DNA from: Pecten maximus
Taxonomy: Eukaryota
Length of the DNA: 64,000 nt
Direction of reading: 5' to 3'
NCBI RefSeq assembly: GCF_902652985.1
Contig: NC_047033.1
Location: 4,402,001-4,466,000, forward strand
Shown: positions 23,868 to 62,088 of the stretch, piece by piece
How the letters are laid out: the number at the start of each line of letters is the position of its first letter
How positions within the stretch are numbered: position 1 is the stretch's first letter
Program-made: the position numbers and the translations under genes
Notes under the pieces: model-generated
What the model saw: only the letters and a program-made list of their open reading frames with translations
Database searches by the model: none
What the model was told of the DNA's origin: nothing

Positions 23868-26183
23868 ATGGATTCATATACGAGAAACCTTCGTACCTAC
23901 TGCCAGTCAAATGGACAATCTCAGGGTAAAACACAACATACCAAATGTCTTGACAGCTATTTTCGACAAAACAGTATGTTCCGTTTGCCAGATTTATATG
24001 ACAGCCAAGATAAGGTATCGGAACACAACATAAATGCATTCTTGGAAAATTCTTATCAAGATGAGAACGGCGGTGATGATTTACTAGAGCCTGTACGTAT
24101 CTCCAATACATGTTCTAAGTCTGTTCAAACAGACTTTTCTTCCAATGAAGTTGTATTATCCGAATACTTGGAGGAGTTTGACCCCCTTTTTGTCAATGTG
24201 AAGGAGAACGACGAACAACAAAGTGAATCGAATCATTCTGGTATGTCGACATTGGCCACAGATGACGAAATGGAGAGTTTTGACTTTTCCAAAGAGGGCG
24301 AAGATGTACTTGTCAACCTGAACTATGACTCCCTCTCCGACGAAAGTGATTGTCCACAATATACGGACAGTGATTTACAGGAAGTGTTAATATCATCGGA
24401 AGTACCACTAACCGGAAGTAAAAAAACGACCGTAAACGCTACGCCTTTAAAAGATCTTGATTTTGAAGTTCACAGCTTGTCGGAGAGAGTGACTTCAATA
24501 TTAACGACAAACGAATCCCTTATTATGAACGGCAGACTTATGTATCACAAAGATGATAGCAGCGACGATGACGAAGAGGAATTCGTTAAAGTTCCAAGAA
24601 ATGTCTTAAAATATGTTCACTTTTCAAATTCGCGTGCTCACCAACAATCCCGGGGAGCTACGTCATGTGAGGATTGTGTCCGTAGTCGAAGATGGTCGGG
24701 GAGAGAACAAAACATGAAAAACGAGGGAAGAAAAAAGAAACAGTCTCCTCCATATACACTTGCGACGAGTTTCTCTCCATCGCGAAAACCGATATCGAAT
24801 ATTTTACCAAACGAAGACGGCAGTATTTGGATTACATTTCAAAACAGCAACATCGTCAAACTTTATGATTACCATGGTAACGCGATCGATTCGATTGACG
24901 TTAGGATGGAGATTGATGACATCACGAGCTCCAAAGACGGGACTCTATATATCTCGTGTCCTAGAGCAAGGTGTATCAAAGTACTCACCAGGACAATGCA
25001 GGTAGGCGGATATATTCGAAATGTAAAATCAAATTAGAATTAAAAACTTATACAGAAATTTAATTACTCACAGCATCTTTGATTAACGTTTAAAAGGTTT
25101 AAACTGTTTCAAAAATTGAACATTTGTCAAAAGCTTTTAACAGAACTATTTTGTATCACGAGCTTAAGACAACGCAAAGCAGTGTAAATATAATTGTACA
25201 TATATCAGTTCGTCACTTTGAAATCGAAGTGAAAATATGCATACATCTGTTTGCTACTACGACATGGACGCATCTCTTTTTAGGGATGTGGACTTGGCAT
25301 AGTGGTAATGGATGCGGGTATTTTTGGCGAGGCGATTCGGTGCCGTAGAACGAGGCCCGGTTAGAGTACGATTTTCTAAGATAAAAAACACGATGCCTCA
25401 CACTTGATTTGAAAGTTTTATGTTATTTTTTTAAGGTACACTAAAGCTAATTGTTAAACTTATTAACATATATATCTATATTTACAGTTACACACTCTAT
25501 TGGTGACCCCGACCTTTGTCCGAGGGATAGTGTTTAGCCCTATCGACAACTGCCTGATTGCCTGTTTGGTTCCTGATCTCACCAACCAGATAGGACAGGA
25601 TTGCTGTAGTCATGGCGCATGCGTAATGCGGTATTCTATTCAACGGCATTGCCGGGCATGCCCGAGAAATACATATTCCGGGTGCTACCACTTCACACGT
25701 TACCATATGCACGTTAATGCGGGAAGCAGGTGTTCAAAGTGCATTTGTTCCCAAGATGTGTATTGTATCAAGTGGTCGAAGGTCACACACGAAAACTTAT
25801 TTAAATATCCTTTCCGAGTCGCTGTGAATTCAAACGGCGATGTGGCTGTGTCTGACCATGGCAACCGGACGGTGCTGCTTTTATCCAATAGCGGAACTTT
25901 GCTAGGCTCGTTTAACCAATCGAATGTGAGATTGTTTATAAACCACGCCCTTGCATTTGACGTCAATAACGATCTACTTATCGTGCAATCGGGACAGAGA
26001 AATATCCTCCGAATACGACGGTATGTAGATTGTTCTACTAGCGTGACGAAATCAACCGTGCCAGAAATGGAATCACAGAGCGTGACGGCCGCGGCGATGG
26101 ATTCTAAAGGAATGTTGCTGGTCGTGATGGATCGGACATTGATCAAAGTTCTCAAGAAAATAGACATTCCACCATTACACTAA
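23868..26183 (+). CDS. Paralog A: acidic disordered N-terminus plus NHL-type beta-propeller (2 exons, ~609 aa)
   Basis: Exons 23868-25001 (CAG|GTAGG) and 25488-26183 (TTTACAG|TTA), phase 0. NHL-like blades: GSIWITF...VKLYDYHG, IDDITSSKDGTLYISC, VRGIVFSP, FKYPFRVAVNSNGDVAVSDHGNRTVLLLSNSGTLL, HALAFDVNNDLLIV. Confidence 0.85.
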
Positions 26184-26869
26184 CCTACATTTATCAAATA
26201 TTCTGCCTGTTTTCCTGTGAGTTCGCCGTGGATGATTTTTGTTCATATGTGTAAAATATCACTGGCAAATTTTCATTGGCTGAGCCATTCGAAACTGACG
26301 GTAAAATTTAGGCATTGACATGACATCAAAAGGGCTGCCTCTGTTTGATTTTAAACAAATTCCATTTTCAAACCTGTCAGAAGAAATGTAGGTTTTCAGA
26401 GTGATGCGATAAATAATTATCTTAAATCTTGTTTCATTTTATATTAAAGACTCCAGAAAAATAAAAATAAAATAAAAACAAGACTCGTTTCATCAAATTT
26501 CCAATGAAATAAATCCTCATTTAAGATCCAATATAAACATGTTTTGTTTATTTCACTGCCTGGTATTAAATGGCTTTACTTACAATGTAGTCGTAAAGTG
26601 TCACAAGCTCGGCTATAACCGGAACAAGGACGTTGCGCCCCTTCAATCAACCAGTAGGTTTAATTTATGTAGGTTATTCCCCAAACATCACGTGGATCTG
26701 AGTTCACGTTAAGGGCCATACACAAAGTAGATCCGGACTCATTTGGTTGTGATCGGGATCTGGGATATAGCTAAACATTAACCAGTAGAAGGACAGATGT
26801 ACAATAAAAAGAAGTTCTACTACATTGAAATAACTACTACTCTAAGAAAAAATCAAAAATCAAAACTCA

Positions 26870-28089: not shown

Positions 28090-28340
28090 TCAATAATAAA
28101 TATCAATGAAATAAGTTCATTTTGAGTTACGTAATTGAATAATGTATGAAATTTACATGTATTTGGTCTATCATAATATTATCTAGACATATGTTTCCGT
28201 CTGCAATTGGGTGTAAGTTGTTGATCACAGTTAAATAAATAATGAAATTGGTCGCCTATTTCTCTTAAATTACATAAAGTGCAAATTCTATTTTCACGTG
28301 GTATATTACACCATCTACCACTTTCACCAAATTTATACGT
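28090..28340 (-). mobile_element. Decayed 3' end of a non-LTR retrotransposon (LINE) ORF2
   Basis: Translates to ESGRWCNIPRENRICTLCNLREIGDQFHYLFNC, the CCHC zinc-knuckle C-terminus typical of invertebrate LINE ORF2 proteins. Confidence 0.75.
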
Positions 28341-28825
28341 AGGCAAATCACAAAAATACCACAGCCTCCTTAAACACACACATACACCTCTACTCCTATT
28401 TTTTCAGAGGGACGTATAAGACAAAGAATTACTTTAGTATTATGATTCAATACCATATGTTTCAGTTGCTATAGTATAACAATTAATATCATTCTGTCAT
28501 TGCAGGGTTAAAATTACCTTCCTGGTCTCAAACGTCAGACAGGAAACATGTCACAATTATGCAGCATTTCAACAGTTTCACATTTCTAAACAAGGTTAAA
28601 ACATTAAACACCGACGTCGAGTCAAGTGTGAAATTTTGACGAGAGTCTATACGGATAGAACACCGATTTGGGAATACTTGGGTGTTTTCAGGTAAATATC
28701 TCATTTATCTATGTTTGTAAGGTAGGTGTTATGTCACGCCCGATTTTATTGTATTTGCACCAGATTCTTAGCGACACCAAACGGTGTCGGAGAATTCCAC
28801 GTCTTCATTTGTACTGCGCTATGGC

Positions 28826-29812: not shown

Positions 29813-30695
29813 CCATTACCACCCATTTATTGTTCTCGGAAAGTAACCATATCACGTGCAGTGACGCCCTCCTTATCTAGATTACGTAAACACTTTGCTC
29901 GCAACCTAATATGATAAATTTGTAATCTGTTCTAGTCATTTAGATTGTTTTGATTTTTAGGAAGTAAATATAGATACACACATTTATAAGGAAAAACCTA
30001 CATCATTTGATGACAAAGAATGTGAATATTTTTTAAATCAATGTCTGAAATGTAAATATTCACTTAAAATGGTTGTCAGACAGGAATGTATTTGCTACTA
30101 ATATTAATGCATTGTGGAAGACAGATAAATATGTAAAACAACCTATGAGATGTAATTCTATAGATCTGTCACCCAGATGGCATTCATATTAGCAATAAAT
30201 ATCATCTGGTAATCGTTCAATCTCTTAGAATAACAAGTAGAAAGAGTGTGTTGTAACGATTTAATGAGTAAAATATAAATATATGTATATACATGTACCA
30301 ATAACAAAAATGCCAACATAATAACAAAAAACATAATTTAAACTGAAAATCGGTAAACCGAAGCGAACATGAACATGAATACGAATACGAACACAAAAAT
30401 AGATTTGCATGGAGACCATTGAAAAAAGAATAAAGACCAGGTGCTCCAGGACTGCAGGCGTCTTCTGCTTCATTGACGACACCCGCCTTACAATTCTAGG
30501 TCGAATCTGTGTTAAGCCACATTCTCAAAATGACAACTTAAGTGATGGTAACGGAACCACTTGGCATATCAACAAGCATAGAACACGTATGACTTCATAT
30601 CTCTTCAATAAATAGACTATTTCCAAATGAGATAAATGTGTTCAAAATTAAATCATGCTGTTTTCTGACTTCATATCGCATAAGGAAACATACAT

Positions 30696-31379: not shown

Positions 31380-34300
31380 ATGGAACAGCCGGAAGGACCC
31401 AGAGGGCTAAATCCGTACTTCCGACAAAACAGCATTTTCCATCTCAACTGTGAGACGTCTAACGTGAACGAAACAGGCAAGGAATCACCCCCTGTTAACA
31501 TTTTAGATACTAAACCACCGCTTGTTCCACGGAACTCCCGAGGCCGAGTACCCCATTTGGTAGAACAACATGAAAGTGATCACTTCAATTGCAGGTATAT
31601 AGACTTCTTGTTTTTTAAAGATCAACACTTAACAGATTAAATACTATCTGAAACTGTATGTATGATGAAAGGGAAAACCAATTAGTGGAAATTTTTTTGA
31701 CAAGAAGTAAATTAAAATGACAAAGATGCAACATGTAAATCTCTGATAATGAGTAACCATGATCGACTGAAAAATAAGAAGTTGCTGTTGTACATTTTTT
31801 GAACTAAACCGAAACTTGATAGAATGCGCCATTTCCTACCTCCAAAGTTTGAGCTAAAACTTTTAGGTGATTATATAATTAACTACATCCAGATGAAATT
31901 CTTTTGCACTCTGTCTGTACATTTCCTATATAAATTTCCAGCAAGCATGTTTCCATTCGTCGGTGTCGATAATACATATTTCCATACTGTTGATGATTTA
32001 TGCATGTTCGAAAAGGAGTGTTTATGTTGTCGGCGGTGTAGCATCTCAAGATAAAGGTTGTTGGATTACTCAATTGAATATGATACTAATAATAGTGCGT
32101 TACTTGACAATGTAAATATTATCACAATAGCTTCAACTTCCTTATGTCAACGAAGATAAAATATACATATATTTATCAGTACAGATGTAGCTGAAGTAGA
32201 TAAGTAACTACTTATTTCATGGTTTCTGTGTTTTTCTCTGCACCTTGTTACCATTAGTGCTTTAGTGTGTTAAGTTATCGACCTGTTCTTCTGTAAATAA
32301 TTTAATAGTAAGGCAGACTGTAACGTTATTTTTTCTTAACCTGCTAATGTTAACAATAGTTAGTTACCGGACCAAAATACTTAAGCCACCCATGGTTAGT
32401 TGTAAAGTGTTTTATAACTTGATAAATTAGGTCCCCTGGGGTTGTTACAGACATATTTAAGTTCAGAAAATGAATTATTTTTACATAGGTCCTATATGGG
32501 GTTTGTTATCAATGGGTTTGACATCAGGAAAATAATAATCACTTTACTGAAGCCCAATGGGATTGTTATAAACGGACTTGTCCTAGGTCCACTGGAGTCT
32601 GTTATAAACGAGTTTGACACAAAGGAAATAACAATAACTTTACCTAGGCCCCCGGGGTTATATTATTAACAGGGTTTGACGACAGGAAAATAATTTACTA
32701 GGTCCCCTGGAGTTTGTTATAAACGTGTTTGACATCAGAAAAATAGTTACTTTACCCAAGCCCCCTGAGATTTTTGTTTAAAACAGGTTTGGCATCAGGA
32801 AAAAATTCCTAGATCCCCGTCCCTGTGGTTTGTTATCAACCTGTTTGACTTCAAGGAAATAATTACTTAACCTAGGCACCTGGGGTTTAATATCAATGGG
32901 TTTGGTATCAGGATAATGATTACTAAGGTTCCTTTGGGTTTGTTTTAAATAGATTTGATTTCAGGAAATATTTTCTTTACCTCTTTTGGTTTGTTACAAA
33001 CGGGTTTGACATCAGGAAAATAATAACTTCAGTCTCCTGGCGTTTGTTAGAAACATGTATGTAAATAGGAAACTCAATAACATCCCATGGGGTTCCAATA
33101 TAGTTTCCTCATATATACATACATGTTTGAGAATTAATTATAACCCCAAACTGTATATATCAACTGCACCGTTATTTGGGGAAAAAAAAAAAAAAAAAAA
33201 AAATCTTTTTTACAAAGTAAAGACAATTTTAGAAATCTGTTTTTCTGTTTATCTTATTTTCTGTGGACGTTTATTTAATACAGTATGGCAGATGATGTCA
33301 CTGATGCTTTAACGTCAGACTGGATTACCAGCCCGATATATGATTTAGACAACACTGCAAAATTATCGCTTTTCAACATAAGTGACAGTTCTGAAAACGA
33401 TTCTAAAATTGGAAATGAAAGGGATATACCAAATACTCTTTACGAATTTTTCGAAGATGATCTGTTTCGGTCGGAACTTAAGAATAATACACTGGAATTT
33501 AGAAAGGACATTGAAGAAGTAGCAACAACTGAAGGTATCAATTTAACTATGTTGACGGATGAGGCAACTCACAATTCTCAACCTCATCTCAAAACTGATT
33601 CATTACCTATACCTTATCCGACTTTGATGGAAAAACAGGAAGGACCCAGAGGGCTAAATCACTACTTCCGACAAGAAAGTATTTTCCATCTCAACTGTGA
33701 GGCGCCCAACGTGAAAGAAACAGGCAATGAGGCGCCTGACGTTACCATTTCAGATATTTCACAGCCGCTTCCTCCACGGAACTCCCAAGGCAGAGTGCCT
33801 CATTTGGCAGAACAACATAAAAGTGACCATTTCAATTGCAGGTATATATATTTCTTGTTTTTTTTCCCAGAAAGATAATTAGTTAACAGATTAAAAGATG
33901 TCAGAATTAGTGTGATGAAAGGGAATATAAAAGTGTATCACTTTTCTGATGAGAAGTAAATCGATAAATGACAATTAAAGACGTTATATGTACATCTTCG
34001 ACAACCTAACACAAGCATTTGATGTTGTATAAGTTAAAACAATACCAGAAATGAATGCAATACTCTTTTACCACCCTTCAAAGTTTGAACTAAAAAGTTA
34101 ATCCTTTTATTTCGAAGTTAATGTATAATTAACTACATCCCGATGAAATTCTACTGTACTTTGTATAATCCAAGTTTTTATTCGTCAATAAGATATACTT
34201 TTATACTGCCGGTAATTTATGCATTTTGACATGCAGTGTTTTCACTGTTGGCGGTGTAGCATCTGCAGATAATGGTTACTGGATTATTCGATTGAGTATG

Positions 34301-37300
34301 AGACTTATAAACATGCTCTTCTGAAGAGAACTGAATGATACGCTAGATCATGGTTATTTATAAAATTTTGTTTTCTTTACCTGTTAAGTTTCACATTGGT
34401 AGGTTACCAGGGACAACTACTTTGGCCGACCGTAGTTAGTTGTAAAAGTGTTTTATTACATAATCAATTCACCGATGCCCCAGTGGTTTGCTATAAATAG
34501 GTTTGACACCAAAAAGGGTTACTAAGGCACAAGGAAAACATACCTAGGTCCCCTTGATTTATCTAGACCCCCTTGGGTTTGTTATAAATGTGGTAGATAT
34601 AGTCAAACAATCACCTAGGTCCCCTTCCTTAGGGTTATTCAGGCCCCCTTGGGTTTGTTATCAACAGGTTTGGCACCAGAAAAATATTTTTTTTAACATA
34701 TACCCGGTTTGAATTAAGAAAAATAAGGACCTAAGTCCCCTGGGGTTTCTTATTTACAGGTTTCACATAAGAAAAATAATTAATTAGGTCCATTATGGTT
34801 TCTTGTCAACAAGTTTGACATCAGAAAAATAATGATTTAGGTCACCCAGGGTTTGTTATAAAGGGGTTTGACACCCAAACATAACTACTAAAGTCCCCTG
34901 GGATTTGTTTTGTTTGTTATCAGGAAACCAAATAATTTAGGTCCCATTGAGTTCCAATGTATTCCTTAATATGTATACACTGTATACGTTTATGGAATGG
35001 AACAGTACACATCACCTGTATAATTATTGGGGAATAACTAGGTATGACAATTAAGAAAAATACTATATATACTATATATTCTACTGTATTTTTTTTCTGT
35101 TGATATTTTGTTAAAGTTGTATTATTCGTTTGCAGTACATTGTTCTCATTCTCTGTTTTATTTCATTTTTATTTCATATCATCACCAGCTCTATATATGA
35201 TTTCGATAACACCACTACAGAATGCCCACATCTCACAACCGACTCTCTATTCTCAATGTCTAATCCAACTAGGATGGAAATGCAGGAAGGACCTAGAGGG
35301 TTTAAGGACTACTTCCGACAAGACAGCATTTTCAATCCTAACCACGTGGTGCCCAACCAGAACGAAAAAGCCAATGAGATGTTCCATAGGAACAAATCAT
35401 TTAACTTTCAGACTGACGCAAATGAATGTGAAGACAACAATAGTGATCATTGTAAAATTACAGATGATACCACTTGTAAATACTCGTTGGGTCATTATGA
35501 TACACCAAGCGCAAATGATGTCTATGTAAGGAAACTCAGGAGACTGGAACAAGAAGTAAACCAACTAGAACGGAGTTTGTGTGACGAATATACAGCAGGG
35601 AAAATTACAAATACTAGCAAGAGAAAGTTGTCCGCTCAACGATCTCTCAGTGACAGCGACATTTCTGAGCTGGTAGATGCTGATAAGGGCCATTCAATCC
35701 CAAATGACAAATATCAAATGGCAAAATCATCAAGCACAGAAGACATCGAAATAAAAACACGATGTAACACAATCAAGAACGCCATTAGCAAAACAAAGTT
35801 CCCTAGCCTTGAAGATATCACACTAGGGGCCAAAGAACTTTGGAGTAATATCAAAACTGCAAGTAGAAATTCTTATGAACCACCGACAAACCTTGAAATC
35901 AAAGTAGATGCACATGTGAAACTGTCATGCCCATGCGATGGGTCGTGTAGGCGTGTGGGGAGGATAGTTGCTACACATGGTGGTTATATATGGGTATCCT
36001 TCACTAAATGTTCTTGGGTGGCCTTGTACAACCATCGACATGTGAAAGTGTTTATGTTGGATACTCGTGGTGGCTATGTAGATAGTCTTGCAGTCTCAAA
36101 GGCCGGAGGTCTCTACATAACCTGTCCCCCACAGAGGAGGATTCTCATGCTCTCAACCAACTTGGAGGTATGCTTCGACACATATTTACTGTATAGATTA
36201 GCTGCTTTATATCTACCACCTGGTTGAAATGTCTCCTTATGTCCTAGATTGCATAGAAAAACTACTTCCTCACTAGTGAAAATTGCATTAGCTAAATCAT
36301 AGNNNNNNNNNNNNNNNNNNNNNNNNNNNNNNNNNNNNNNNNNNNNNNNNNNNNNNNNNNNNNNNNNNNNNNNNNNNNNNNNNNNNNNNNNNNNNNNNNN
36401 NNNNNNNNNNNNNNNNNNNNNNNNNNNNNNNNTTTCATTTTATATTACTTTATAACATCTGTTATTATCTACAACAATTAAAAGTTCGGATGTTTGTATT
36501 TTTATACACAAGAATACGTCTTCTGCTTCACTGTATATATGATAGAAAGGACAAAGGGTCGCAGCAACATGGTATCCATATTTACAACATTCTAGACGAT
36601 CCAATGCATTGTTTGGTTTGTTTTCTTTATGTTCTATAAATACAATGGTGTCATTTCTAAACGGTGTCAGCGAAGGATGGGACCACTGACGAACTCATCT
36701 ATAGTGCCACCATACTAAAATGCCATGCCTATGAGTAATAATCCTAACGTACAATGCCCAATTGAAAGCGTTAAAGAATTTAAAGAAAGCCCCTTTTCCT
36801 TAAATTCTACAATTCGTTTCCATGGACAATTTTAAGTTAAGGAACTACCTTAAGTTAGAAAATTTGTTGAAATCTGGGCCTGATATTGAAAAAGTGGTAC
36901 CCAAATGCATAACATTTTACTTGTCAGAAGGTTAACCAGGCATTAAAGCCATTCTATTGCTCTTTGTCAAGCAAAGCACAAAAAGTATCGATTTTATAGT
37001 TTCAGCCAAGGGAATTATAAATGAAAGATAAGTCGTCCCTAACGAATCATGCAATTTGGAAAACCTACCTGTATGGCATATCCAATTAAGTATTTAGATA
37101 TTTACATTTACTTACTGCTGATTATCTTTTACAGTTGTACGACTCGTGCTGCAACTACGTTGTTCGATTCCTATTAATTATTAAGGAATTCGAGAGAGGT
37201 TTCCTTACATTTTTTAATACTACATGTATAACGATTTATGTTTAGTTTAAAATCCCTAAACTTAAATGATATTAGGAATTTTACGTACAGAAATTCCAAA

Positions 37301-37946
37301 AGTACCCTACTGAAATAATTTAATCTTGAATTAAAACTTATTCTATGTTTTTTCTCTCTCAATTTTTCAGTTGACGGAACTTGGCGTCTTCAATACACTG
37401 TATCCAAGAGGTCTCGCTGTATCACCAGAGGACTATACTATCGTTGTCTGTATGGTTCCACATTTGGAGGGTCGCGATATGTGTGCTCCCTCAAAGGACA
37501 GCTGTCTGATGCGCTTCACGGGACAAAAGTCAAACGAGCTCGGGACAATTGTCAACATGGATAGCTATTTCGGATATCCGATGAAAGTAGTCATTAATGT
37601 GAATGGGGTTTTATTAGTGTCAGATTTTGGTTTGAAATGTTTGTTTGTTTTGGATAAAGGCGGACATATGTTGCGGACATTTTCCGTGTTAGGGGGAGCA
37701 GGTCTGTCTAATGTGCATGCTCTTGCGTGTAACCCTGGTAACTCTTTCTTCGTCGTCCAAGGAGGAAGTGGAACGCTTTCGATCACAGAACTAGTGAATG
37801 GCAACCTAGGGATATTTGAGGAGAAGTCGACATCAAAGAAGGATGTAAAATCTATAAAACGAAACGTTGTGACATCGTCAATGGTAAAAGCCCGTAAGAT
37901 AGCTTTAGCTTCTGGAAATGCCATCATATACGTTTCCCTTGTGTAG
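31380..37946 (+). CDS. Paralog B: internally duplicated disordered N-terminus plus NHL-type beta-propeller (4 exons, ~775 aa)
   Basis: Exons 31380-31594, 33284-33841, 35189-36167 and 37371-37946 have phases 2, 2, 0 and total 2328 nt in frame. Blades: GYIWVSF, VDSLAVSKAGGLYITC, YPRGLAVSP, FGYPMKVVINVNGVLLVSDFGLKCLFVLDKGG. The start codon and the exon-3 acceptor are less certain. Confidence 0.78.
32420..33100. repeat. Degenerate ~55-bp intronic tandem repeat; homologous arrays at 34480-34960 and 44235-44410
   Basis: Recurrent ctaggtcccctggggtttgttataaac.ggtttgacatcaggaaaataat units. Confidence 0.75.
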
Positions 37947-46400: not shown

Positions 46401-49400
46401 ACCATGTAGGAATTGGTCCTGATATTATCGATTGCAAATTACGATGTCATTAAATATATTATAGATTCTAGCGGTTACTTATCGATACTTATCCCTATTT
46501 GTTTGTGTTGCTATTTCTAAGATATATACACTCTTTTTATAACAAACTCTGTCAATGAATTCGGGAGATATCAACAGACGTTTGAAGACTACATCCCGTT
46601 TATGCTAACTGCATGCTTCTTGTGAAAGCGAAAGTGATGCTGAATTTAGCGATGCTCGCTCACTCTAGGATACTGCCGAATACTGCCAGCAGGACAATAC
46701 ATCCGGTCACAGTATACTAAAAATAGGCGAACCAATCTTTCCATTCTCAAAATACGGTGTAATAAGCATTATGGGGGATTAGCAAGTGAGATAGGGAGAC
46801 TGGCATGTATCGGGAAGGGAAACGTGAGGACGTATGCTCTAATATTTCGTAACATAGGTTTTTAGAGCGCTCATTAGTCAAAGGTCGATTATGAAATGAA
46901 ATATGGAGATAGGTAAGAAAGAAATTAATTTTATGTTTTTTGCGATCACAATTGCTCCACGCATGGAGGTCAATAACAACCGACCAATCAGATCGTGAAT
47001 AACATAAAATTATTTGCGAGATGGCGATCGAAGTACCCCAGATATTTATAGGCAAGGAAAACCAAACAGGTAAAAGGGGCGAAGTGTAGCAATATAAATA
47101 AGTTTGTTTTGGTCTAATATTCGACTTTAACATTTCTTATGGAATAAGGCATCTAATGTTCGGCTTATCGAATAGGCCTTTTAAAATATTCTCGATCGTG
47201 CACGACTTAAGAAAAATTGTCTATTAATGAAGTTACGAGACTGCCTATGAAAGTTTCACCTCTCTCTCTATTTTGTCATAATCGACGTTTGACTAATGAA
47301 CGTGCTAAACACCAATGAAAAAAAAAGTTGTATAGAAAGAAAAGAAAAAATAATATCCCTTTAGTTGCCTTTTACAAATCAAGGAAAACTGGTAACCGGT
47401 ATAATTCTTACAGCTAAGCTGCAGGTATGATGCATATATTATGATAATTAAGATTAAAACAAAAACATTACTTAATTAACTTAATTATCTTTAGTTCTAG
47501 TCATGATTTCATGCAATGTTAGTTTAAGAAAGTAATTAAAAAAGCAAAACATAATATGCTGTCGTTTTTTCCATCCTTCCGACCGTCAGAATTTACATAA
47601 TAATGAAAAACATTAATTTTCTCTTATTATCTTTCAATTTGATCATAAATTACAAAAATATTTTCATTACGATGTAATAATAAAATACTAGGATAATAAT
47701 CTCTGCTTTGAAATAGAAACATTCGTCTAAAATGATATCCTAGGTAATTATTATCTGCAATTTCGTCGAAAAACTAATAAACGTTGAAATTGAGTATCTA
47801 AGATATAGTATGCAAGGTATTTGTTTAATTCATTTATTAATTCTGTCAGTTTTTCTTTGAACTTTGGACATGCATTTTTCAGATGTATTGTAGACCCTAC
47901 AACTTATCGAAGCTACACTTTAGTTTACATGGTACAACTATTGATAGACATTATGTTTGGATTCATTATATATTAAACAATGTTTTATTGTCAGTTTATA
48001 CCATATGATAGTATCTACAATGTACAACAATCAAAAGTAGGTCGGATGTTTGTATCTATATATATACAAGAACACACCTTCTTCCTGTTAGAGTATCTGT
48101 TTCTTCATATATATGATAGAAAGGGCAAAGATTACAGCAATATTTCAACCATGACAATAATATCTGGACAATCAAATATATCGTCTGGCTTGACGTTGTT
48201 TTACGTTATATTGACACAATAATGTCATTTATAGACGATGTAAATGAAGAATGGTGTCATCATACTAGCCAAACCTGGAAACAGTCGTGTAACATCCGAT
48301 CCTGTCATATTATACTATCAACAGGACCTTATCGCCTAACTGACGAACTCTTTTATAGTACCATCGCCAGGAAATGTCACAGCTGGGGCCAGTTTTATCA
48401 GTATTCCTTGCAGAATTTAATGAAGGTTTATTCGCTTAATTTTAAGGAATGTTGATGAAAATATTGCCAGTTATTTATAGTATGACACGCAAATTCATCA
48501 AATTATACTGACAACGGGTAACATGACCTTACATCCTTTTTAATGATCTACGTCAAGCAAAGAACAGGAAAAACCAAATTTATAAATTTAGTTTAAGTAT
48601 GTTTAAATATATATTGTTATTTATTCAGTATTTAACGCAACACATGCTAAATCACAACCTGAATATAGTTGTCGCCGGATTAACCCTTCAATATCTTTTT
48701 ATTTTATTTTATTTAGATTAAGCATGTGTTACATTTGATAGTGAATAAATAATGATGTGTGTTTAGTCTAGTCTGACATGCTCAAACTAAAATGGAGATA
48801 TAAGGAATCCAACATAAAGAAGTTCCAAAATTTACTTACTGAAATAATTTCATCTTGAATTAAAACTTATTTTGCATCTTTTTCCTATTCTTCAGTTGAC
48901 GGTACTCGGCGTCTTTGACTCACTGTATCCAAGAGGACTCGCGGTATCACCAGATGACGACACTGTCTTTGTCTGCATGGCGCCACATCTTGAGGGTCGC
49001 GAGATGGGTGCTCCTTCAAAGGACAGCTGTCTGATGCGCTTCGCGGGGCAGGAGCCAAACGAATCCCGGACAATTGTCAACATGGATAGCTATTTCGGAT
49101 ATCCGATGAAAGTAGTCATTAATGTGAATGGGGTTTTATTAGTGTCAGATTTTGGTTTGAAATGTTTGTTTGTTTTGGATAAAGGCGGACATATGTTGCG
49201 GACATTTTCCTTGTTAGGGGGAGCAGGTCTGTCTCAGGTTCATGCTCTTGCGTGTAACCCTGGTAACTCATTCTTCGTCGTCCAAGGAGGAAGTGGAACG
49301 CTTTCGATCACAGAACTAGTTGATGGCGACCTAGGGATATTTGAGGAGAAGTCGACATCAAAGAAGGATGTAAAATTGATAAAACGAAACGTTGTGACAT

Positions 49401-49471
49401 CGTCAATGGTAAACGCCCGTAAGATAGCTTTAGCATCTGGAAATGCTATCATATACGTTTCCCTCGTGTAA
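43469..49471 (+). CDS. Paralog C: disordered N-terminus plus NHL-type beta-propeller (3 exons, ~665 aa)
   Basis: Exons 43469-43623 (CAG|GTATGT), 44720-45986 and 48896-49471 have phases 2, 0 and total 1998 nt in frame. Close paralog of B. Confidence 0.85.
44419..44640 (+). mobile_element. tRNA-derived V-type SINE, copy 2 (paralog C intron 1)
   Basis: Highly similar to 12879-13099. Flanked by CCCATTGT at 44406 and 44641, a probable TSD. Confidence 0.88.
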
Positions 49472-53753: not shown

Positions 53754-56700
53754 ATGGCGAGGCAAGTCAATACAGAAAACACTACCAGCGTGGATATGTT
53801 TTGCCGAGCGATCCAGGAAGACAATGATGATATGTTTTGCCGAGCGATCCAGGAAGATAATGATGATATGTTTTGCCGAGCGATCCAGGAAGACAATGAT
53901 GCTATGCATTGTTTGATATTCCCACACATTCCGCCGCCACCTCTACCAAGGAAAAACATCAGAATTCCTATGAAGAGACCAGTCAATCTAAATGATCAAC
54001 ACAAGTGTGGGTAAGTAATGGCTATTGTAATATAGAGCATGAAGGAAGCTGTTATACGCCCAGGCCCCGCTTGTATGAAAATACTTAAGTGTTGAGATTT
54101 CTTTATACAAGCGGGGCCAGGTAACTCTATTACAGCTTAATAACCCTTAGGATAACAAGAGGCCAAGGGCCACGTAGTTCTCTGGGCATGGTATTATGAT
54201 TCTATTTATTGTTGTCGATTTCTTGCATTTGGTAATTATAATTTGTTTGTCAGAATCAACATCTCAACTATAAACGATTTTTAATAATGTAGCTCTTACG
54301 ACTTTTTCAGTTAAAATCTCAAATTTTCCGCTCAGTCAGCAACCGAAAATCAACAATCAACCGATCATCAATCAATCTGTAACCGAATAACCGATAAAAT
54401 GTTATCATCAATAAAAAATCTATAACTGAAGAATGAGCAATAAAACGGTTATTATGATGTATCACAGTATTATAGTATTATAATCTATAATTATTTGCTT
54501 GTGAATTATGTGCACGCTATATTCTTACCTTGAACTTTCCGATGACATACAAGAGTCCTTTAACATCGTACCATTTCTGATTATTTTTATTTCTATAGCT
54601 GTCGTCGTCCGAATGATGTTAATGTTGTCAATGTTTGTACGTTATAAACTATCGTTATAATGGACATTTTGAGTATCTGCATGTTTACATTTGAGGGAAT
54701 TAAAATTATTCAAAAAACGTTCATATTTACTACTTTTATAGAAAAGAAATATTTTAGTCACAGACCGTATCAGATAGCGAGGAACAACAGTCAAAACGAC
54801 CCCTACTTAAGCTGGCTCACTGCGTACACTCCTATTGTGGTTGATAAGGGAGATATAGTAAGGCCATGTATACATGTGTGCAACGTTGAACCCAACATAC
54901 ACTTGTACACATGTGCTTCACCGTGGTTACTAAAAATAGACATTAAAACTTAAAATTTTTAAATAAAAGAATTCCAGTTGATATCGAATATTCTTATTGT
55001 TATCAACACAACAACTTTACAATACCTATTATCTGGCATCACAACATACAGCCATGAATGCACAGTTAGGTTGAAATATTTTCGACCGATGGCTATAGTT
55101 CTCGGGGCTATACTTAGCCCCTAAGAATATGTAAATATGTTAGGACCATCTTCTACTTTTACCTCATTTAATGAATATTTCATAAGCGTACATGCTTATT
55201 ATTAGATAGGAATAAAAAAATAAAAAAAATGATATATTTCTACGAATGTTCCATAAAGATTACTGTTCATCACCTGATGTTAAAACATATTATTGATGAA
55301 CTACTCAGTTAGGAATTTCAAAAACATTGTTAATCAACTTTTTATTGACGTGATATCGCCCAGATTAAATGATATCATATAGATTTATAACACATACGTT
55401 AGTACTCATCCAATAATTAAAACATACATATACTATTGCCGTAATACATTCGTAAGTTAGGGGAATTGCACATTGTTTCATTTATTATATTAACAAGTGT
55501 AAACATTGGTCTGTTGCCTGCGTACTGAAAATATAATGCATACATTTAAAGATGCTACGTCTTCGTGTAATAATGATCATTAAAAAAGGCTTTAACTCAT
55601 CTTTTCATCTTTTAATTTAAAAGTTAACTATAAATCAATTGCATTCCCAAGAAATTACACCGCTTCTATATTTATACATTAGTGACAGATTTATACGATG
55701 AGCGTGCATGTATTGTTGTGACGGGAAATATACATATATAGGATGACGGTGTAGTATAAAAATGTAATTCAATTAAATTTTGCGAATTCTTTATTTCGCG
55801 AAATTATCTCTTATTAGACGTATTCACGAATACATGATTTCGCGAACTCTGATCTAGAAATGACTTTAAATTCACGAGTGATGAGCTATTGGAGACATGG
55901 AATCAAGACTTCTATACAGGCACCGATAGCTTCATATTGGTAACTGTTTTGGTTTTTACTGTCATCAATTCTTTTTGTGATTATACCAGAACAGTCACGC
56001 GATTCAGTAAAGTGATATATACCATGGTACATGCTAGCTCATATATGTAGTAAGTAGACAAATAAAACCTACAAATGGGAACATTTCACCTGCTTTTTAT
56101 GTTTGGAGAGTGAGTGAGTTGAATTTTTCCAACTCCAGTTTTTTTGATACACGTGCTCCACTTCCGACTTTCATCTACATCTACATTCAGCAATACGGAG
56201 TTGTTATCAAAAAAGTGCACTTCTAAATATTCATGATTTTAAAGGTAATATGTTTCTAGCATTTTTTTGGTAATTATATATATGGTATATACATGTAATG
56301 ACATAATTAACGGAAATGGATGTCATCCAGATTTGTTAGTTTCGTACAAATAATCTTTAAGGATTTGAATTCGCGATTGACTCTCCTCGCTTGTTAACGC
56401 AAAAATAAATTCCACACGAAGTGGTTTGCAGCACATAATTTAAAAATGCCATTGTCAAAAATCTGGCATCCACAGTATCGGATTACACACAGCACCTCAG
56501 CAGTGACGGAAAACAGCTGTAATTTAGAATCCTTGCAAGTGCGTCAATTCGAGTGTCCTACTTACAAATGAAACAACGTTTAAAAGGCGAACATATATGG
56601 AACATTTTTGATACCATTTCACAAGAAAATGCTTATTTTTGATGACTGTTACACAAAAGATAGAATACATGGTCAATGCCTTTAACTATATAAGCGGTAT

Positions 56701-59700
56701 TTTTGACTCGGGACAGAAAAACAAAGACATGTAACTTTGTCTTTCTTTACCCTCGCCAAAATACAGCTTATATTTCAAGACACTAAACACATATTCTCTC
56801 TATATAGGATGTTAATCTCAGTATAGTGGTTTATGTATTTAAAAGTATACATTTCACTTTATGAGAGATGGCATGTGCTACATGTACTTTGATTTTAGAT
56901 AATTAATTATTTTCTTTCACATTATATAGTTTGGAAGCCCAAGACACAGATTTGATCGATCTAATCACATTTGAGGATGAGGAAGAAACTGAAGAATTGA
57001 CAGAAATCGCTCCGGAAGATTCTAGAAACTATACGGATGGTGTACCTATGAATAGGGATATAGAACATGTGAATGTCGAGTCCGAAAATGAGCAAAGTCT
57101 TGACAATTTGTTTAAAGATGACTTATTGAAATATTCGTTTGATTTTGTCGAATGTAGAAGAACGTCCCAAACTCCGGATTTGGACATATTTTCAAACGAA
57201 GATGTTGACAGGCAACATACGAGTCACTATACGGCCACAAATCCATTTATTTCAATAACTGAACCAGCAAAACAAATATTTTCAACTCCGAAACCGCTGT
57301 CAGTTCACTCTGCGGGCAGCCAACATCTGAGTGATGCTACGGCCACAAATCCATTTATTCCGATACCTCAACAAGAAAAACAATTTTATTCAACTGTTCA
57401 ACCGCGGAAAATTCACTCCGCGGGAAAGGCACATCTGAGTGACGCTACAGCAACAAATCCGTTTATTTCCATATCTGAACCAGAAGAACAAATACATTCA
57501 ACTCTTAAAACGCGGACGATAGAAAAATATAGTCCTTTTCAACAGGAGAAGATTGCATTTGGATTTGAATCATCGGTCGACAACGGCTCCGGGGAAAATT
57601 ATCAGAAAAGGCCCCGACTTAATGAGGAAGTCTCCATATCCAAATCATTATGTGAGTTGAACATCTTCTCCGGAGAAGACAATCCTGATACACCTGACAT
57701 TGTTGGTCAGGCTGGTCGCGACAAGCAACAGAATAATCCTTTTCTAAGAAAAGGGACATTTGACATCGTTACTAAACAAAACGATCATGAAAGCTGTCTA
57801 CAGAATTCTGTGGTGGATGAGACTATGTCTTCGACTGACCCCAACTCTGTGGAATGTCACGATGAGATACATACCTATGATTGTGATAACCAGATATATC
57901 ATGACACGGTTGTATTCAACAGCAATTCATGGCCAAAGGTGCATGATATGAACAAGGATCATTTTATTCAATGCACATCTGAAACAGGGCAGCTACCAGC
58001 ACTGCCAAGTCCGTGTTCTGTAGATAAATCAACTGGACTTTATCTAAATACGACTCAACATGGATCACAAGAAAAGCAGGACTGTGTGGTATATGACTAC
58101 CCAGCAAATTGTCAATCAGGAGAAATACGTCACAGGTATACGTCCTCAGATGATGAAGGCGAATACATTACTATGTCACCTATTGTAAGCAAATGCCGTA
58201 CTCATATTAACAAAAACAAGGCAGTCCAACAAAGTTCATGGAAATATGAATCAGGAAGTGACGCAAAGAGAGACCCTGACCGAACAAAAAAAGCACACCC
58301 ATTTCTTACCTCCCAGCGCTCTCTAAGTGACAGTGATATCTGCGGTCCAAACGTTTTTGGAGACAGCAAGCTAGATGCAGGGGTAGCGTACGATTGCAAC
58401 GATGGAAGGCAAATGAAAAAACATAAAAGCAAAGATAACGGTAAATTCAACGAAGGGAATTTTTTAACCAAGTTCTTCAAGCGCAACCGAAAAAACTCAC
58501 AGCTATCTACAGCAAAGCCGGGCGGTTATTTAAATCTGTTTTGTCCGTGCGGGGGTTCCTGTGACCGAATAGGGAATTTGGTGACGTCATCAGAAGGGCA
58601 GATGTGGGTTTCCTTTCTCCACTGTACTTGGGTGTCACTATACGACCACCGACTACGATTCCTGCATAAGTTTGACGCCGGTGGTATTGTGGATGATCTC
58701 GCTGTGTCGCCAGCCGGTGTCCTATATATCTCCTGTCCTCGACATAGGAAAATTCTCATGCTCACCACTAACCTAGAGGTATGTGTTGGCTTTACAGCTC
58801 AAGATATATATTCCAGAGTGTGTACGATTATATCAACGTGGTAAACAAAATAATCTAATGTTTATTTAAAGATTCAATTCAAAATTTTCTTTCACAAATT
58901 CTATCATGATATAAATTTTGCAGCTAAATTGCTGTCTTTCTCAGATAGGGCTATTTTTCTAGCACTAATATATTAACGATTTCCCAAAAACAATTGGTAA
59001 TCAACAATTCTTTCTCAATTTCTACTCATTTTAATATAATAATGCTGCAAATACAATTTCAGTGTTTCTTGAGTAAAATATCGCATTGGAATCATATTAT
59101 GAGAAATACCTACTGAAGCAAGAAAGGAAAAATGCTCGAAAAAATGAACCGGCTTTGAAAATTCTCGAAATAATCTTTGCATTGCTGATTAATCACATAT
59201 ATACTTTATTACTAATTCAAACGATAAACGATAAGATGATGGCAAAAGAATAGCAATTGCTTAATAGCAATTGCTTAACCAAGGGCAAAAAAAAATAAAA
59301 AAAATATAGATTTGCACTGAAACTGAAGTAGAATTAGACCAGGTGTACCGGTATAGTAAGCGACTTCTGCTTCTTCGACGACACACGCCATACAAATCTA
59401 GGTCACGGCGACACCCGCTATACAAATCTAGGTCACGACGACACACGCCATACAAATCTAGGTCACGGCGACAAACGCCATACAAATTTAGGTCACGACG
59501 ACACAAGCCATACAACTCTAGGTCACGACGACACCCGACATACAAATCTAGGTCACGACGACAGACGCCATACAACTCTAGGTCACGACGACACCCGCCA
59601 TACAAATCTAGGTCACGACGACACACGCCATACAAATCTAGATCACGACGACAAACGCCATACAAATCTAGGTCACGACGACACAAGCCATACAAATCCA

Positions 59701-62088
59701 GGTCACGACGACACAAGCCATACAAATCTAGGTCACGACGACACACGTCATACAAATCTAGGTCACGACGACACACGCCATACAATTTTTTATCAAATCT
59801 GGGTTAGGTTAAGTCACATCCGTGGTTGAGCGTTTGGTTAGTGAAAAGCTATGAGCAGAATATAAAATATCACGGCATGATTTTTCAGGCAAATAAGAAA
59901 AACTATATCCTCTTGTTTAAAAACATTCATTGAATTATTTTTTCGTTATAAAAGAAGTAACTTTGCCATAGATAGGTATATTATATATCATACAAATATA
60001 TCATGGGTTTCTGGGCAAAAGTCCAGAATATTTGACACGGGGTACTTGTAATCGACCGCTGTTCTATTGCTCGAGGCAGAAGCCTGAGTGCAATAGAACA
60101 TCGGTCGATTACCAGTACCGAGGGTCAAATATTCTGGACTTTTGCATAGACGCCCATGATATACTTGTTTTATTACATAATCACTAAAACACACTTAGAA
60201 TCACTGAAATTTCAACATCCCTATAGGCCTAGAAGTAGCCTGGCAGTATTGACATCTTAGTGACTAAGACGCTTGAAATGGTATTACAATTTCGAAATAG
60301 TCATTTTAGCCGTTTAATAGTATACATTTATTGTATGGGTCTGAGGGAAATACCACTTTTATTGTCCCCCGAGGCATGAACTATTTTCCGAGGTGAAGCA
60401 AATACAACTGCACTGCACTGCACTGCACTGCACTGGAGCTTAATGTTGAGTGCGCCCAAATGAATATGTTACCATTATGTTTTCTATTTATACATTAAAC
60501 CTTGTGATGTGATACACATCTATACCATGGCTCTTAAAACAATCATTCAATGTAAATCTTATGAGTAATTCTATTTCCGTGAATTCATTTCAGCCATACA
60601 CGAGGACGTATTGTAAAAATCCACAGTTCTCGGTTCAGTTTGTCAGCCCTGTCATCTTCACGCTATGTTAACTCAAAACGTTTAATTAAGAACCATACTC
60701 AAATAACATTACAATTATAATTAAAGCTAAACTGTTCCTCTTATATATTATAGTTTAATGTAGGGCAGAATTTGAATATTTTTTTTGCAAATATCTAATT
60801 ACCAAAATTAAATATTGATATTATAATTAACGTGAGGAATGACTCTACTAAATCATAACTCAATGATAGTCAGACTAGAACAAGTCTTAAACAAAGCTTT
60901 AGTTACTCATCCATAAATAGACTAAATTATGAAATATTTTAAAATAATATTATCTATATCATCTAAAGTAAATATTACTTTACTAATTCAACTATTTGAT
61001 AGGAAATTTATATGAAGTGTGTTCGTGGCTTATTAAAAGAAACATTATAATAAAACAAACTGCAATAATACAGGATACACATTTGCTTAATTGTATGTTA
61101 ATATCGGTTAAAATTCTACACTTTTATGATATCAAATTCGTACTATAAATTAAGATTAAGAGAAGCTGCAATTTTTAAGCATTTTTGTGATTACATTGTT
61201 TCCCTTGCAGCGTTTAAACCTGCCTCGAAGGATCAATTTGTATAGAAAGCTCTTTTGTAAACTCTTTCATTGTAGTGTACTCAAAATTTTAGCGTGTAAC
61301 ATAACTGTAAGATATTAGCGAAATGATGAGTTATGGTTACGGCGAAAAGCGTTAAAATGAAATAACCACTAAAATATGTATGCCTACATGATGTTCATCA
61401 CACTAAGTTAATATTAATGGTTATGCTAATCCAAGTATACGCCTTATTTCTTTATTTCAGTGTATACAGTAAATGCAAAACTAGGGATAAACAATAATAT
61501 AATTATACTTGTTTACTGTAGTTGGGGACAATGTGTCATTTCAACAAGCTGCATCCACGAGGACTTGCAATTTCCCCGATAGATGGATCTGTGGTTGCCT
61601 GTTTGACGTCAGAAGAGCTTGGACACTTGATGACTGGCTCTTCAAATAACTCTCTGATGAAATTTGCAGGAAAAAGAAAGAACGAAGAAGGAAAAGTTTT
61701 GAACAAAGGCGATTTTCTTGGTTATCCCATGAGGCTTGCCATTAACATAAATGGATATATCTTAGTCTCGGATTTCGGTTTGAGGTGTATGTTTGTTTTG
61801 AACCAAGGAGGGCTCATGCTAAAGAAGTTGACCATATTAGGAGAACGACAGCTATGCCAAGTGCACAGCATTACACATGGTCATGGTGAAACCTTTTACG
61901 TTGTACACGGCGGGCGTGGTAGGTTAATCATCACACGACTGCAGGAACACCGGGGTTGCGTAACACAGGAGACTTCACGACGTTTGGACCCAGACATTTA
62001 CTGTAAAGTTCGAGCATCTACTGTTACTCAGAGAGGTCAGCTAGTAGTAACCTCTGGATCGGTAGTTAAATACATCTCTCCTGATTAA
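53754..62088 (+). CDS. Paralog D: NPF-repeat disordered N-terminus plus NHL-type beta-propeller (3 exons, ~890 aa)
   Basis: Exons 53754-54010 (TGG|GTAAGT), 56930-58778 and 61522-62088 have phases 2, 0 and total 2673 nt in frame. Blades: GQMWVSF, VDDLAVSPAGVLYISC, HPRGLAISP, LGYPMRLAININGYILVSDFGLRCMFVLNQGG. Confidence 0.85.
54063..54118. mobile_element. Tiny palindromic MITE (GGCCCCGCTTGTAT...ATACAAGCGGGGCC)
   Basis: Perfect 14-bp terminal inverted repeats. Confidence 0.6.
59330..59820. repeat. 30-bp minisatellite (~13 units) expanded inside a dispersed repeat, in paralog D intron 2
   Basis: TACAAATCTAGGTCACGACGACACACGCCA units. The flanks match the repeats at 26930, 30425 and 42340. Confidence 0.9.
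59997..60163. repeat. Long inverted repeat (74-bp arms, 19-nt spacer); probable palindromic non-autonomous transposon
   Basis: 59997-60070 pairs with 60090-60163 with about 9-10 mismatches. The spacer is tcgaggcagaagcctgagt. Confidence 0.8.

What the first reader, a model, noticed from the sequence alone, without database searches (positions are those of the whole stretch)
23868..62088. Tandem array of four 'TRIM-less' NHL-propeller genes with long motif-packed disordered N-termini: a candidate undescribed adaptor/receptor family
Seen in sequence: four same-strand paralogs share a phase-0 intron at the same position inside the propeller, and B, C and D also share a phase-2 first intron after a ...C(R/S/G) junction. 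None shows RING/B-box Cys-His patterns. Instead, 300-600 aa of acidic low-complexity sequence carries short islands that stay conserved while the surroundings diverge. Established: expanded bivalve NHL proteins are usually TRIM-like (B-box/coiled-coil/NHL), and NHL propellers bind RNA or protein. Inference: the TRIM module has been replaced by a linear-motif scaffold, giving a cargo-binding propeller coupled to endocytic, autophagic or kinase docking sites, diversifying by tandem duplication next to a C1q-domain gene.
Basis: partly seen in the sequence, partly recalled or inferred. Interest (0 to 1): 0.85.

Follow-up and report, generated by a model that had tools for sequence, protein, structure and literature searches.

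The report
Scallop NHL-propeller genes without TRIM module
Four neighbouring king-scallop genes belong to a small, uncharacterised scallop-and-oyster protein family that joins a long acidic, motif-studded disordered arm to a TRIM-type NHL beta-propeller with no ubiquitin-ligase module; the family is real and apparently undescribed, but its proposed adaptor role is only inferred.

Summary
The window (Pecten maximus) carries four intact same-strand paralogues, NCBI LOC117317990, LOC117317659, LOC117317660 and LOC117317859, all named 'uncharacterized protein'. Each has an acidic disordered N-terminus of 298-619 aa (pI about 5). Each also has a basic propeller of about 270 aa (pI about 9), split by one phase-0 GT-AG intron at the same codon.

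B, C and D share a phase-2 first intron after a Cys codon. The assembly gap at 36303-36432 lies inside B's propeller intron and touches no coding sequence.

AlphaFold models of C and A give six-bladed propellers. Their five best structural matches are the NHL domains of TRIM2, TRIM71/Lin41, Brat and Mei-P26 (Z 25-27). No RING or B-box is found in any of the 13 full-length family proteins, or in any frame of the 64-kb window. The nearest outside relatives mostly carry both.

The family forms a supported clade of scallops plus oysters, with the same intron site. Subfamilies A, B/C and D predate the scallop genera.

One N-terminal motif (L-D/N-x-Y/F-F-x-x-D/N-(S)-hydrophobic-F/L) is present in every member. 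Only D orthologues carry 4-6 NPF motifs, and two of the three also carry a clathrin box.

The adaptor function is inference. RNA reads could not be checked. I class this as a new variant of a known kind, of moderate interest.

The parts
23868..26183 (+). Gene A (LOC117317990, 609 aa). Exons 23868-25001 and 25488-26183; propeller coding from about 24762.
   Evidence: Exact GT/AG model reproduces P0004. AF2 propeller residues 296-601, pLDDT mostly 85-95. TRIM2/TRIM71/Brat NHL Z 25.7-26.2.
23949..23981 (+). Family motif in A (LDSYFRQNSMF).
   Evidence: AF2 pLDDT rises to 52-73 over residues 21-40, while the rest of the arm stays near 30.
24564..24593 (+). Acidic run followed by F-x-x-V in A (LIR-like candidate). 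Conserved in the Argopecten orthologue.
25647..25748 (+). Cys-rich insertion (CxxC ... CxxCxC) inside A's propeller. Specific to subfamily A.
   Evidence: Alignments. Present in Pecten, Argopecten and Ylistrum (P0011). AF2 confidence is low for residues 437-466.
31380..37946 (+). Gene B (LOC117317659, 775 aa). Exons 31380-31594, 33284-33841, 35189-36167 and 37371-37946. Three copies of the family motif.
   Evidence: Exact model reproduces P0002. Internal 2.25-kb tandem duplication: 31355-31616 matches 33602-33863 at 82%.
36303..36432 (.). Assembly gap, inside B's phase-0 propeller intron (36168-37370).
   Evidence: No residue is missing relative to C at the junction.
43469..49471 (+). Gene C (LOC117317660). 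Exons 43469-43623, 44720-45986 and 48896-49471; propeller coding from about 45741.
   Evidence: AF2 of P0001: propeller 370-649 with pLDDT 80-92, helix 235-271. Brat NHL Z 26.7.
43538..43558 (+). PPPLPPR in exon 1 of C (class II SH3-ligand pattern). Equivalents lie in B (31515-31532) and D (53934-53954).
   Evidence: Also present in Mizuhopecten, Argopecten and oyster members.
45105..45137 (+). Family motif in C (LNHYFRQDSIF). A second, shorter copy lies at 44895-44924.
45438..45470 (+). Ser-rich acidic island (SQRSVSESNVF...) in C. It is the best-conserved island of subfamilies B/C and D. An aromatic-x-x-V/L pattern follows in most members.
53754..62088 (+). Gene D (LOC117317859, 890 aa). Exons 53754-54010, 56930-58778 and 61522-62088; propeller coding from about 58530.
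   Evidence: Exact model reproduces P0003.
56961..56975 (+). Clathrin-box pattern LITFE followed by an acidic run, in D.
   Evidence: LIIFE sits at the same place in the Argopecten D orthologue.
57230..57743 (+). NPF region of D. A 108-nt (36-aa) coding tandem repeat carries three NPF motifs, and a fourth lies at 57735-57743.
   Evidence: Tandem repeat. NPF counts are 4, 4 and 6 in the three D orthologues against about 0.1 expected, and zero in the ten other members.
63605..64000 (-). Neighbouring C1q-domain ORF, cut by the window end. Not part of the family.
   Evidence: Pfam C1q E 3.6e-17.

Best explanation
These are four functional, tandemly arrayed members of a small bivalve family found in scallops and oysters. 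The proteins appear cytosolic. Each has an acidic, intrinsically disordered N-terminal arm carrying conserved short linear motifs. This arm is joined to a basic six-bladed NHL propeller of the TRIM-NHL type. There is no RING, no B-box and no long coiled coil.

Shown here: the gene structures, the fold, the absence of a TRIM module, the clade, the conserved motifs, and moderate purifying selection.

Inferred: the proteins act as non-enzymatic adaptors. The propeller would bind a ligand (protein or RNA). The arm would recruit partner machinery through a class II SH3-ligand pattern (PPLPPR), the family motif (L-D/N-x-Y/F-F-x-x-D/N-(S)-hydrophobic-F/L), and a Ser-rich acidic island followed by aromatic-x-x-V/L. 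Subfamily D would be specialised for EH-domain and clathrin endocytic machinery, through 4-6 NPF motifs and an L-hydrophobic-x-hydrophobic-E box.

The stated confidence covers the whole statement. The structural part alone I would put at about 0.9, and the adaptor mechanism at about 0.4.
For: - Intact exon models with GT/AG sites and shared intron phases.
- AF2 propellers at pLDDT 80-95, with arms below 50.
- The five best structural matches for both models are TRIM-NHL domains, Z 24.8-26.7, rmsd 2.5-3.2 A, 243-259 residues aligned; Foldseek agrees.
- A family profile hits TRIM3, TRIM2, TRIM71, Brat and Thin NHL chains at E 3e-12 to 1e-7.
- No RING or B-box in 13 members or in the six-frame window. 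Among 46 nearest outside relatives, 25 have a B-box and about 20 a RING. The closest relative in the same genome has a B-box plus NHL in one exon.
- The family forms a clade at 98/94 support. Scallops are at 99/95 and oysters are sister.
- Orthologues of A, B/C and D occur in Argopecten, Mizuhopecten and Ylistrum, as neighbouring loci.
- The family motif is present in all 13 members. Under a strict pattern it was found in no non-family protein among the 174 held.
- NPF is enriched only in D orthologues; none of 5000 shuffles per protein reached the observed count.
- The propeller has pI 8.5-9.5 in most members, against pI 4.3-5.8 for the arm in most members (up to 6.2).
- dN/dS between B and C is 0.47 in the propeller and 0.66 in the arm.
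- A 2445-nt Logan contig encodes the whole 670-aa Argopecten B/C protein across the intron junction, so it is a spliced transcript.
Against: - No binding, localisation or expression data exist for any member.
- RNA reads for Pecten could not be examined, so the first exons rest on NCBI models.
- Short-motif patterns are permissive.
- The aromatic of the LIR-like site is lost in Pecten B and D.
- AP-2 motifs (DPF/W, FxDxF) are absent from the D orthologues.
- No membrane-binding or ubiquitin-binding domain is detected.
- The ligand of the propeller is unknown. Its basic charge fits RNA binding at least as well as protein cargo.
- dN/dS values are fairly high.
Confidence: 0.5

Rival explanations
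1. The proteins are RNA-binding post-transcriptional regulators of the Brat / Mei-P26 / LIN-41 kind. The basic NHL propeller would bind specific RNA motifs, and the disordered arm would recruit repressor or decay factors rather than trafficking machinery. This overlaps with the adaptor reading and differs mainly in the ligand.
For: The five best structural matches are all RNA-binding TRIM-NHL domains. The propellers are basic, at pI 8.5-9.5 and net charge +4 to +15 in most members. From established knowledge, Brat works without a RING.
Against: Sequence identity to those domains is only 11-15%. The RNA-contacting residues were not examined. Two members have near-neutral propellers (Ylistrum B/C pI 7.4, Ostrea pI 6.5). 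NPF repeats plus a clathrin box in subfamily D point to membrane traffic.
Confidence: 0.25
2. The gene models are incomplete. Under this reading the real transcripts begin with unannotated RING/B-box exons, so these would be ordinary TRIM-NHL genes.
For: There is an assembly gap 470 nt upstream of A's start codon, at 23238-23395.
Against: No RING or B-box coding potential exists in any frame of the 64-kb window. Annotated models from seven species all lack them. The Argopecten transcript contig holds a complete 670-aa ORF without them. Genes B, C and D are each preceded by another family member rather than by free space.
Confidence: 0.03
3. These are decaying remnants of TRIM-NHL genes with no remaining function.
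For: dN/dS is relatively high, at 0.47-0.66 between B and C. B has a messy internal duplication.
Against: All four reading frames are intact. The three subfamilies are kept in four scallop genera, and a homologue with the same intron is kept in oysters. Motifs are conserved within otherwise diverged arms. dN/dS is below 1.
Confidence: 0.05

Closest known systems
TRIM-NHL proteins (TRIM2, TRIM3, TRIM71/LIN-41, Brat, Mei-P26, Thin)
   Same: The C-terminal six-bladed NHL propeller. These are the best fold matches (Z 25-27) and they match at the sequence-profile level (E 3e-12 to 1e-7).
   Different: No RING, no B-box, no filamin domain and no long coiled coil. Only a predicted helix of about 37 residues is present, and only in subfamily B/C. 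Instead there is a 300-600 aa acidic disordered arm with its own motifs, and the propeller is split by a family-specific phase-0 intron.
Expanded bivalve RING/B-box-NHL (TRIM-like) genes, for example the same-genome ORF L011:730-2274
   Same: They are the nearest sequence relatives of the propeller and occur in the same phylum.
   Different: Those genes carry a B-box and/or a RING, and the one relative examined here (L011) is a single exon. The family here forms a separate clade (98/94), has only four members in this genome, and has a different N-terminus.
NHLRC2 and other non-TRIM NHL proteins
   Same: An NHL propeller without a TRIM module; NHLRC2 scores Z about 22.
   Different: There is no thioredoxin-like domain and no C-terminal beta-stranded domain. 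NHLRC2 ranks lower structurally than the TRIM-NHL domains.
NPF/clathrin-box endocytic adaptors (from my own knowledge: epsin, Numb, stonin-type proteins; EH-domain ligands)
   Same: Subfamily D has 4-6 NPF motifs, a clathrin-box pattern and a proline-rich SH3-type site in a disordered region.
   Different: There is no ENTH, ANTH or PTB membrane or cargo module, and no AP-2 motifs. The folded domain is an NHL propeller. This is a resemblance in how it may work, not a family relationship.

Membership tests
NHL-repeat six-bladed beta-propeller | A six-bladed propeller fold of about 270 residues | tested here: met
   AF2 models of C and A at pLDDT 80-95. Brat/TRIM2/TRIM71 NHL Z 25-27, rmsd 2.5-3.2 A, about 250 residues aligned. 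Foldseek E about 1e-12.
NHL-repeat six-bladed beta-propeller | Sequence match to the NHL repeat | tested here: met
   Single-sequence Pfam hits are weak: best E 1.6e-4, and 8 of 13 members at E <= 0.05. A family profile hits TRIM3, TRIM2, TRIM71 and Brat NHL chains at E 3e-12 to 1e-7.
TRIM / RBCC proteins | N-terminal RING finger | tested here: not met
   None in 13 members, and none in any frame of the window.
TRIM / RBCC proteins | One or two B-boxes | tested here: not met
   None found, although 25 of 46 nearest outside relatives have one.
TRIM / RBCC proteins | A long antiparallel coiled coil after the B-box | tested here: inconclusive
   One predicted helix in C (residues 235-271, pLDDT about 70). 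Its KLRELEQE core is conserved only in subfamily B/C. There is no TRIM_CC Pfam match.
NHLRC2 | A thioredoxin-like domain N-terminal to the NHL | tested here: not met
   No such Pfam match. The N-terminus is predicted to be disordered.
Clathrin/EH-associated endocytic adaptor (a functional class, for subfamily D only) | Several NPF motifs plus a clathrin box in a disordered region | tested here: met
   NPF counts of 4, 4 and 6 against about 0.1 expected. LITFE and LIIFE in Pecten and Argopecten D.
Clathrin/EH-associated endocytic adaptor (a functional class, for subfamily D only) | AP-2 appendage motifs or a membrane/cargo-binding module (ENTH, ANTH, PTB) | tested here: not met
   No DPF/W or FxDxF in D orthologues. 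No such Pfam domain.
Selective autophagy receptor (a functional class) | A functional LIR that binds Atg8-family proteins | not testable with these tools
   There are only pattern-level candidates: S-D/E-S-D-I/V-Y/F-x-x-V/L in most B/C members, and an acidic run plus F-x-x-V in A. The aromatic is lost in Pecten B and D.

The most novel reading that the evidence does not exclude
This may be a pteriomorph-bivalve family of ligase-independent, TRIM-derived receptors. A propeller inherited from the expanded B-box-NHL repertoire would recognise a specific intracellular ligand, possibly non-self. The disordered arm would deliver that ligand directly to clathrin/EH endocytic machinery (subfamily D) or to Atg8/SH3 machinery (subfamilies A and B/C). 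The universal L-D/N-x-Y/F-F-x-x-D/N-(S)-hydrophobic-F/L motif would be a new docking or autoinhibitory element that contacts the basic propeller.
Probability: 0.12. Interest if true: 0.7.

Novelty: new variant of a known kind. Interest (0 to 1): 0.45.

Why it matters
Bivalves have greatly expanded TRIM-like NHL genes, whose roles are mostly unknown. This family shows one route by which such a propeller was uncoupled from ubiquitin-ligase chemistry and attached to a linear-motif scaffold.

The family is old enough to be shared by oysters and scallops, with the same intron. It is small enough (four genes here) to study directly. Subfamily D gives a concrete, testable link between an NHL propeller and EH-domain/clathrin machinery.

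If the adaptor reading fails and the propeller binds RNA, the family would instead be a ligase-free Brat-like regulator specific to molluscs. Either outcome is of moderate, specialist interest.

Tried and rejected
Pecten expression and 5' ends therefore remain unverified here.
The species of the unnamed family fragments P0013-P0015, P0046 and P0144 could not be found. By BLASTP they are divergent members or exon-sized fragments, so the family may be wider than scallops plus oysters.
- Word-indexed homologue searches. The three searches returned only Pecten's own records and one Argopecten orthologue.
- ESM Atlas. It gave only generic NHL clusters.
- Literature. Searches for all twelve locus names and for NHL/TRIM expansion in bivalves found nothing on this family.
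- Other motif classes for the family motif. I considered the eIF4E-binding pattern (Y-x4-L-hydrophobic) and FFAT, AP-2 and LIR patterns, and rejected them. The spacing varies by one residue between copies, and the first aromatic is not always Tyr (pattern comparison from my own knowledge).
- Upstream ligase exon. I considered the minus-strand ORF at 28182-28403 (E 0.019 to a RING/B-box protein) as a hidden exon and rejected it. It is on the wrong strand, has no Pfam match, and from its sequence looks transposon-like (not tested).
- Joined spliced models. Searches were run exon by exon by reference, and full-length work used the database's own records P0001-P0004. Exons were concatenated only inside local scripts, to check that they translate to those records.


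Full report
**What is in the window.**

ORF listing and translation show four same-strand genes. Each has a large N-terminal coding exon and a C-terminal exon of about 190 aa. Exon-by-exon searches by reference identified them as Pecten maximus loci:
- LOC117317990 (A, P0004)
- LOC117317659 (B, P0002)
- LOC117317660 (C, P0001, isoform X2)
- LOC117317859 (D, P0003)

All four are named 'uncharacterized protein'. I recovered exact exon boundaries by requiring GT/AG sites and identity of the translation to these records:
- A: 23868-25001 | 25488-26183
- B: 31380-31594 | 33284-33841 | 35189-36167 | 37371-37946
- C: 43469-43623 | 44720-45986 | 48896-49471
- D: 53754-54010 | 56930-58778 | 61522-62088

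Full-length work used the database's own records.

**The gap.**

The N run at 36303-36432 begins 135 nt downstream of B's exon-3 donor and ends 938 nt upstream of the exon-4 acceptor. B's protein aligns to C's across that junction without a gap. The gap is therefore intronic and does not bear on the reading frame; only the intron's length is uncertain. A second gap (23238-23395) sits in a microsatellite 470 nt upstream of A's start codon.

- The propeller intron is phase 0, GT-AG, and falls at the same alignment column in all four genes.
- The first introns of B, C and D are phase 2 (exon 1 lengths 215, 155 and 257 nt), directly after a Cys codon. A has no such exon, in Pecten or in its Argopecten orthologue.
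- The N-terminal regions are 298-619 aa long, with pI 4.6-5.0. The propellers are basic, at pI 8.9-9.2 in the four Pecten proteins.

**Fold and family.**

Pfam gives only weak NHL-repeat hits. AlphaFold2 models of C (P0001) and A (P0004) both give a confident six-bladed propeller at pLDDT 80-95, with a disordered arm.

An exhaustive structural comparison puts the NHL domains of Brat, TRIM2, TRIM71, Lin41 and Mei-P26 in the top five for both models. Scores are Z 24.8-26.7, rmsd 2.5-3.2 A, with 243-259 residues aligned. Other six-bladed propellers follow within 1-3 Z units. Foldseek agrees. A family profile also hits TRIM3, TRIM2, TRIM71, Brat and Thin NHL chains by sequence, at E 3e-12 to 1e-7.

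**No TRIM module.**

None of 13 full-length family proteins has a RING or B-box at E <= 0.05. A sensitive search of the N-termini of 19 RING/B-box relatives against every open frame of the window found nothing on the + strand.

Among 46 of the closest outside hits of the profile search, 41 have NHL, 25 a B-box and about 20 a RING. The nearest relative elsewhere in this genome is a single-exon B-box-plus-NHL ORF.

**Distribution and history.**

A profile search of 1.84 billion representatives gave 463 hits, but only 11 below E 1e-30. The strong hits are all from scallops: Mizuhopecten, Argopecten and Ylistrum. They carry consecutive locus numbers, which indicates a conserved cluster.

Weaker hits with the same N-terminal motif, a PPPPLP site and a propeller come from the oysters Saccostrea, Ostrea and Crassostrea virginica. 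An Ostrea genomic ORF runs out of frame-conserved sequence exactly where the scallop intron lies. The phase-0 intron is therefore shared.

A maximum-likelihood tree of propeller domains gives these results:
- the family is a clade (98/94);
- scallops are a clade (99/95), with oysters as sister;
- subfamilies A, B/C and D are each represented by two or more genera;
- B and C are a recent Pecten duplicate pair.

The root is not established. 'TRIM module lost or replaced' is the likelier direction, but it is inferred. Unnamed exon-sized fragments (P0013-P0015, P0046) are divergent members from unidentified species, so the range may be wider.

This genome has only these four members.

**Are they working genes?**

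- All frames are intact.
- dN/dS between B and C is 0.47 in the propeller and 0.66 in the arm.
- A 2445-nt Logan contig encodes the entire 670-aa Argopecten B/C protein across the intron junction, and so is a spliced transcript.

**Motifs.**

- **Family motif.** One motif, L-D/N-x-Y/F-F-x-x-D/N-(S)-hydrophobic-F/L, occurs one to three times in every one of the 13 members. This includes the oysters, where it is followed by an acidic run. Under a strict pattern it was found in no non-family protein among the 174 proteins held.
- **SH3-type site.** A class II SH3-ligand pattern (PPLPPR or PPPPLP-K/R) lies in exon 1 of C and D, with a PPLVPR variant in B exon 1, and in Mizuhopecten, Argopecten and oyster members.
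- **Ser-rich island.** A Ser-rich acidic island (R-K-L-S-x-Q-R-S-L/V-S-D/E-S-D) is the best-conserved island in B/C and D. In most members an aromatic-x-x-V/L follows it. A carries an acidic run plus F-x-x-V at the corresponding place. These fit the LIR pattern, but the aromatic is missing in Pecten B and D.
- **NPF and clathrin box.** NPF occurs 4, 4 and 6 times in the three D orthologues, against about 0.1 expected, and never in the other ten proteins. The repeats that carry it have expanded independently. A clathrin-box pattern (LITFE, LIIFE) followed by acidic residues is shared by Pecten and Argopecten D. AP-2 motifs are absent.

**Mechanism.**

The best-supported reading is a non-enzymatic adaptor. 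A TRIM-type propeller binds a ligand, and a disordered arm recruits machinery, with D specialised toward EH-domain and clathrin traffic. The steps from motif to partner are inferred.

The main rival is a Brat-like RNA-binding regulator. This is favoured by the basic propeller and by the identity of the best structural matches. It differs mainly in the nature of the ligand. Incomplete models and pseudogenes are unlikely.

**Verdict.**

This is a new variant of a known kind: an NHL propeller with a novel, lineage-restricted N-terminal architecture. It is uncharacterised in databases and in the searchable literature. Interest is moderate.

Earlier notes from this scan on the same window agree with what I tested: D's NPF/clathrin signature and B's internal duplication. 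The internal duplication is a 2.25-kb unit, with 31355-31616 matching 33602-33863 at 82%. Other notes on this genome concern the separate B-box-NHL arrays.

Noticed in passing
window 25647-25748 (gene A, exon 2): Subfamily A carries an insertion of about 45 aa in a propeller loop, with a CxxC ... CxxCxC pattern. It is conserved in Pecten, Argopecten and Ylistrum and absent from B/C, D and oysters. AF2 confidence there is low. It may be a zinc-binding loop.
   Followed up: partly
window 23928-23987 (gene A residues 21-40): In the AF2 model of A, the stretch holding the family motif reaches pLDDT 52-73 with a short helix, while the rest of the arm stays near 30. This may mean the motif is modelled against the propeller.
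   Followed up: no
window 37228-38202 vs 48749-49745: The last exon and flanks of B and C are more alike (83% DNA identity; propeller dS 0.19) than their N-terminal exons (about 74%; dS 0.43). This suggests gene conversion at the 3' end of the pair.
   Followed up: partly
window 45012-45059 (gene C, exon 2): NCBI isoform X2 (P0001) lacks 16 aa that the window encodes. The 48-nt stretch has no GT-AG boundaries and is too short for a usual intron. It may be an indel polymorphism or an annotation adjustment.
   Followed up: partly
window 53793-53906 (gene D, exon 1): A 36-nt coding tandem repeat (3.2 copies) gives three copies of a 12-aa unit at D's N-terminus.
   Followed up: no
window 2394-4785: Two arrays of the same 46-nt satellite (20 and 32 copies) meet head to head at about 3314, in opposite orientation. 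They form a large inverted satellite junction with raised GC content.
   Followed up: no
window 28827-29815, 59376-59785, 14923-15927, 18832-20447, 1153-2259: There are several further satellites: 39-nt x25 between A and B; 30-nt x14 inside D's propeller intron; and 41-nt, 49/146-nt and 22-nt arrays upstream. They create long spurious ORFs in several frames.
   Followed up: no
window 28182-28403 (minus strand): A short Cys/His-containing ORF that looks like a transposon remnant. It gave the only weak hit (E 0.019) to a RING/B-box protein, and it has no Pfam match.
   Followed up: partly
window 63605-64000 (minus strand): A C1q-domain coding exon (Pfam E 3.6e-17), cut by the window end. It is on the opposite strand to the NHL genes.
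   Followed up: partly
oyster proteins P0175, P0179, P0017 (not in window): Oyster members share further conserved islands that are absent from scallops (R-G-S-C-P-G-F-x-G-T-W-E-R-D-S-L-L and K-Y-D-N-L-L-A-N-E-G-L-E). They also carry two to three acidic-flanked copies of the family motif.
   Followed up: no
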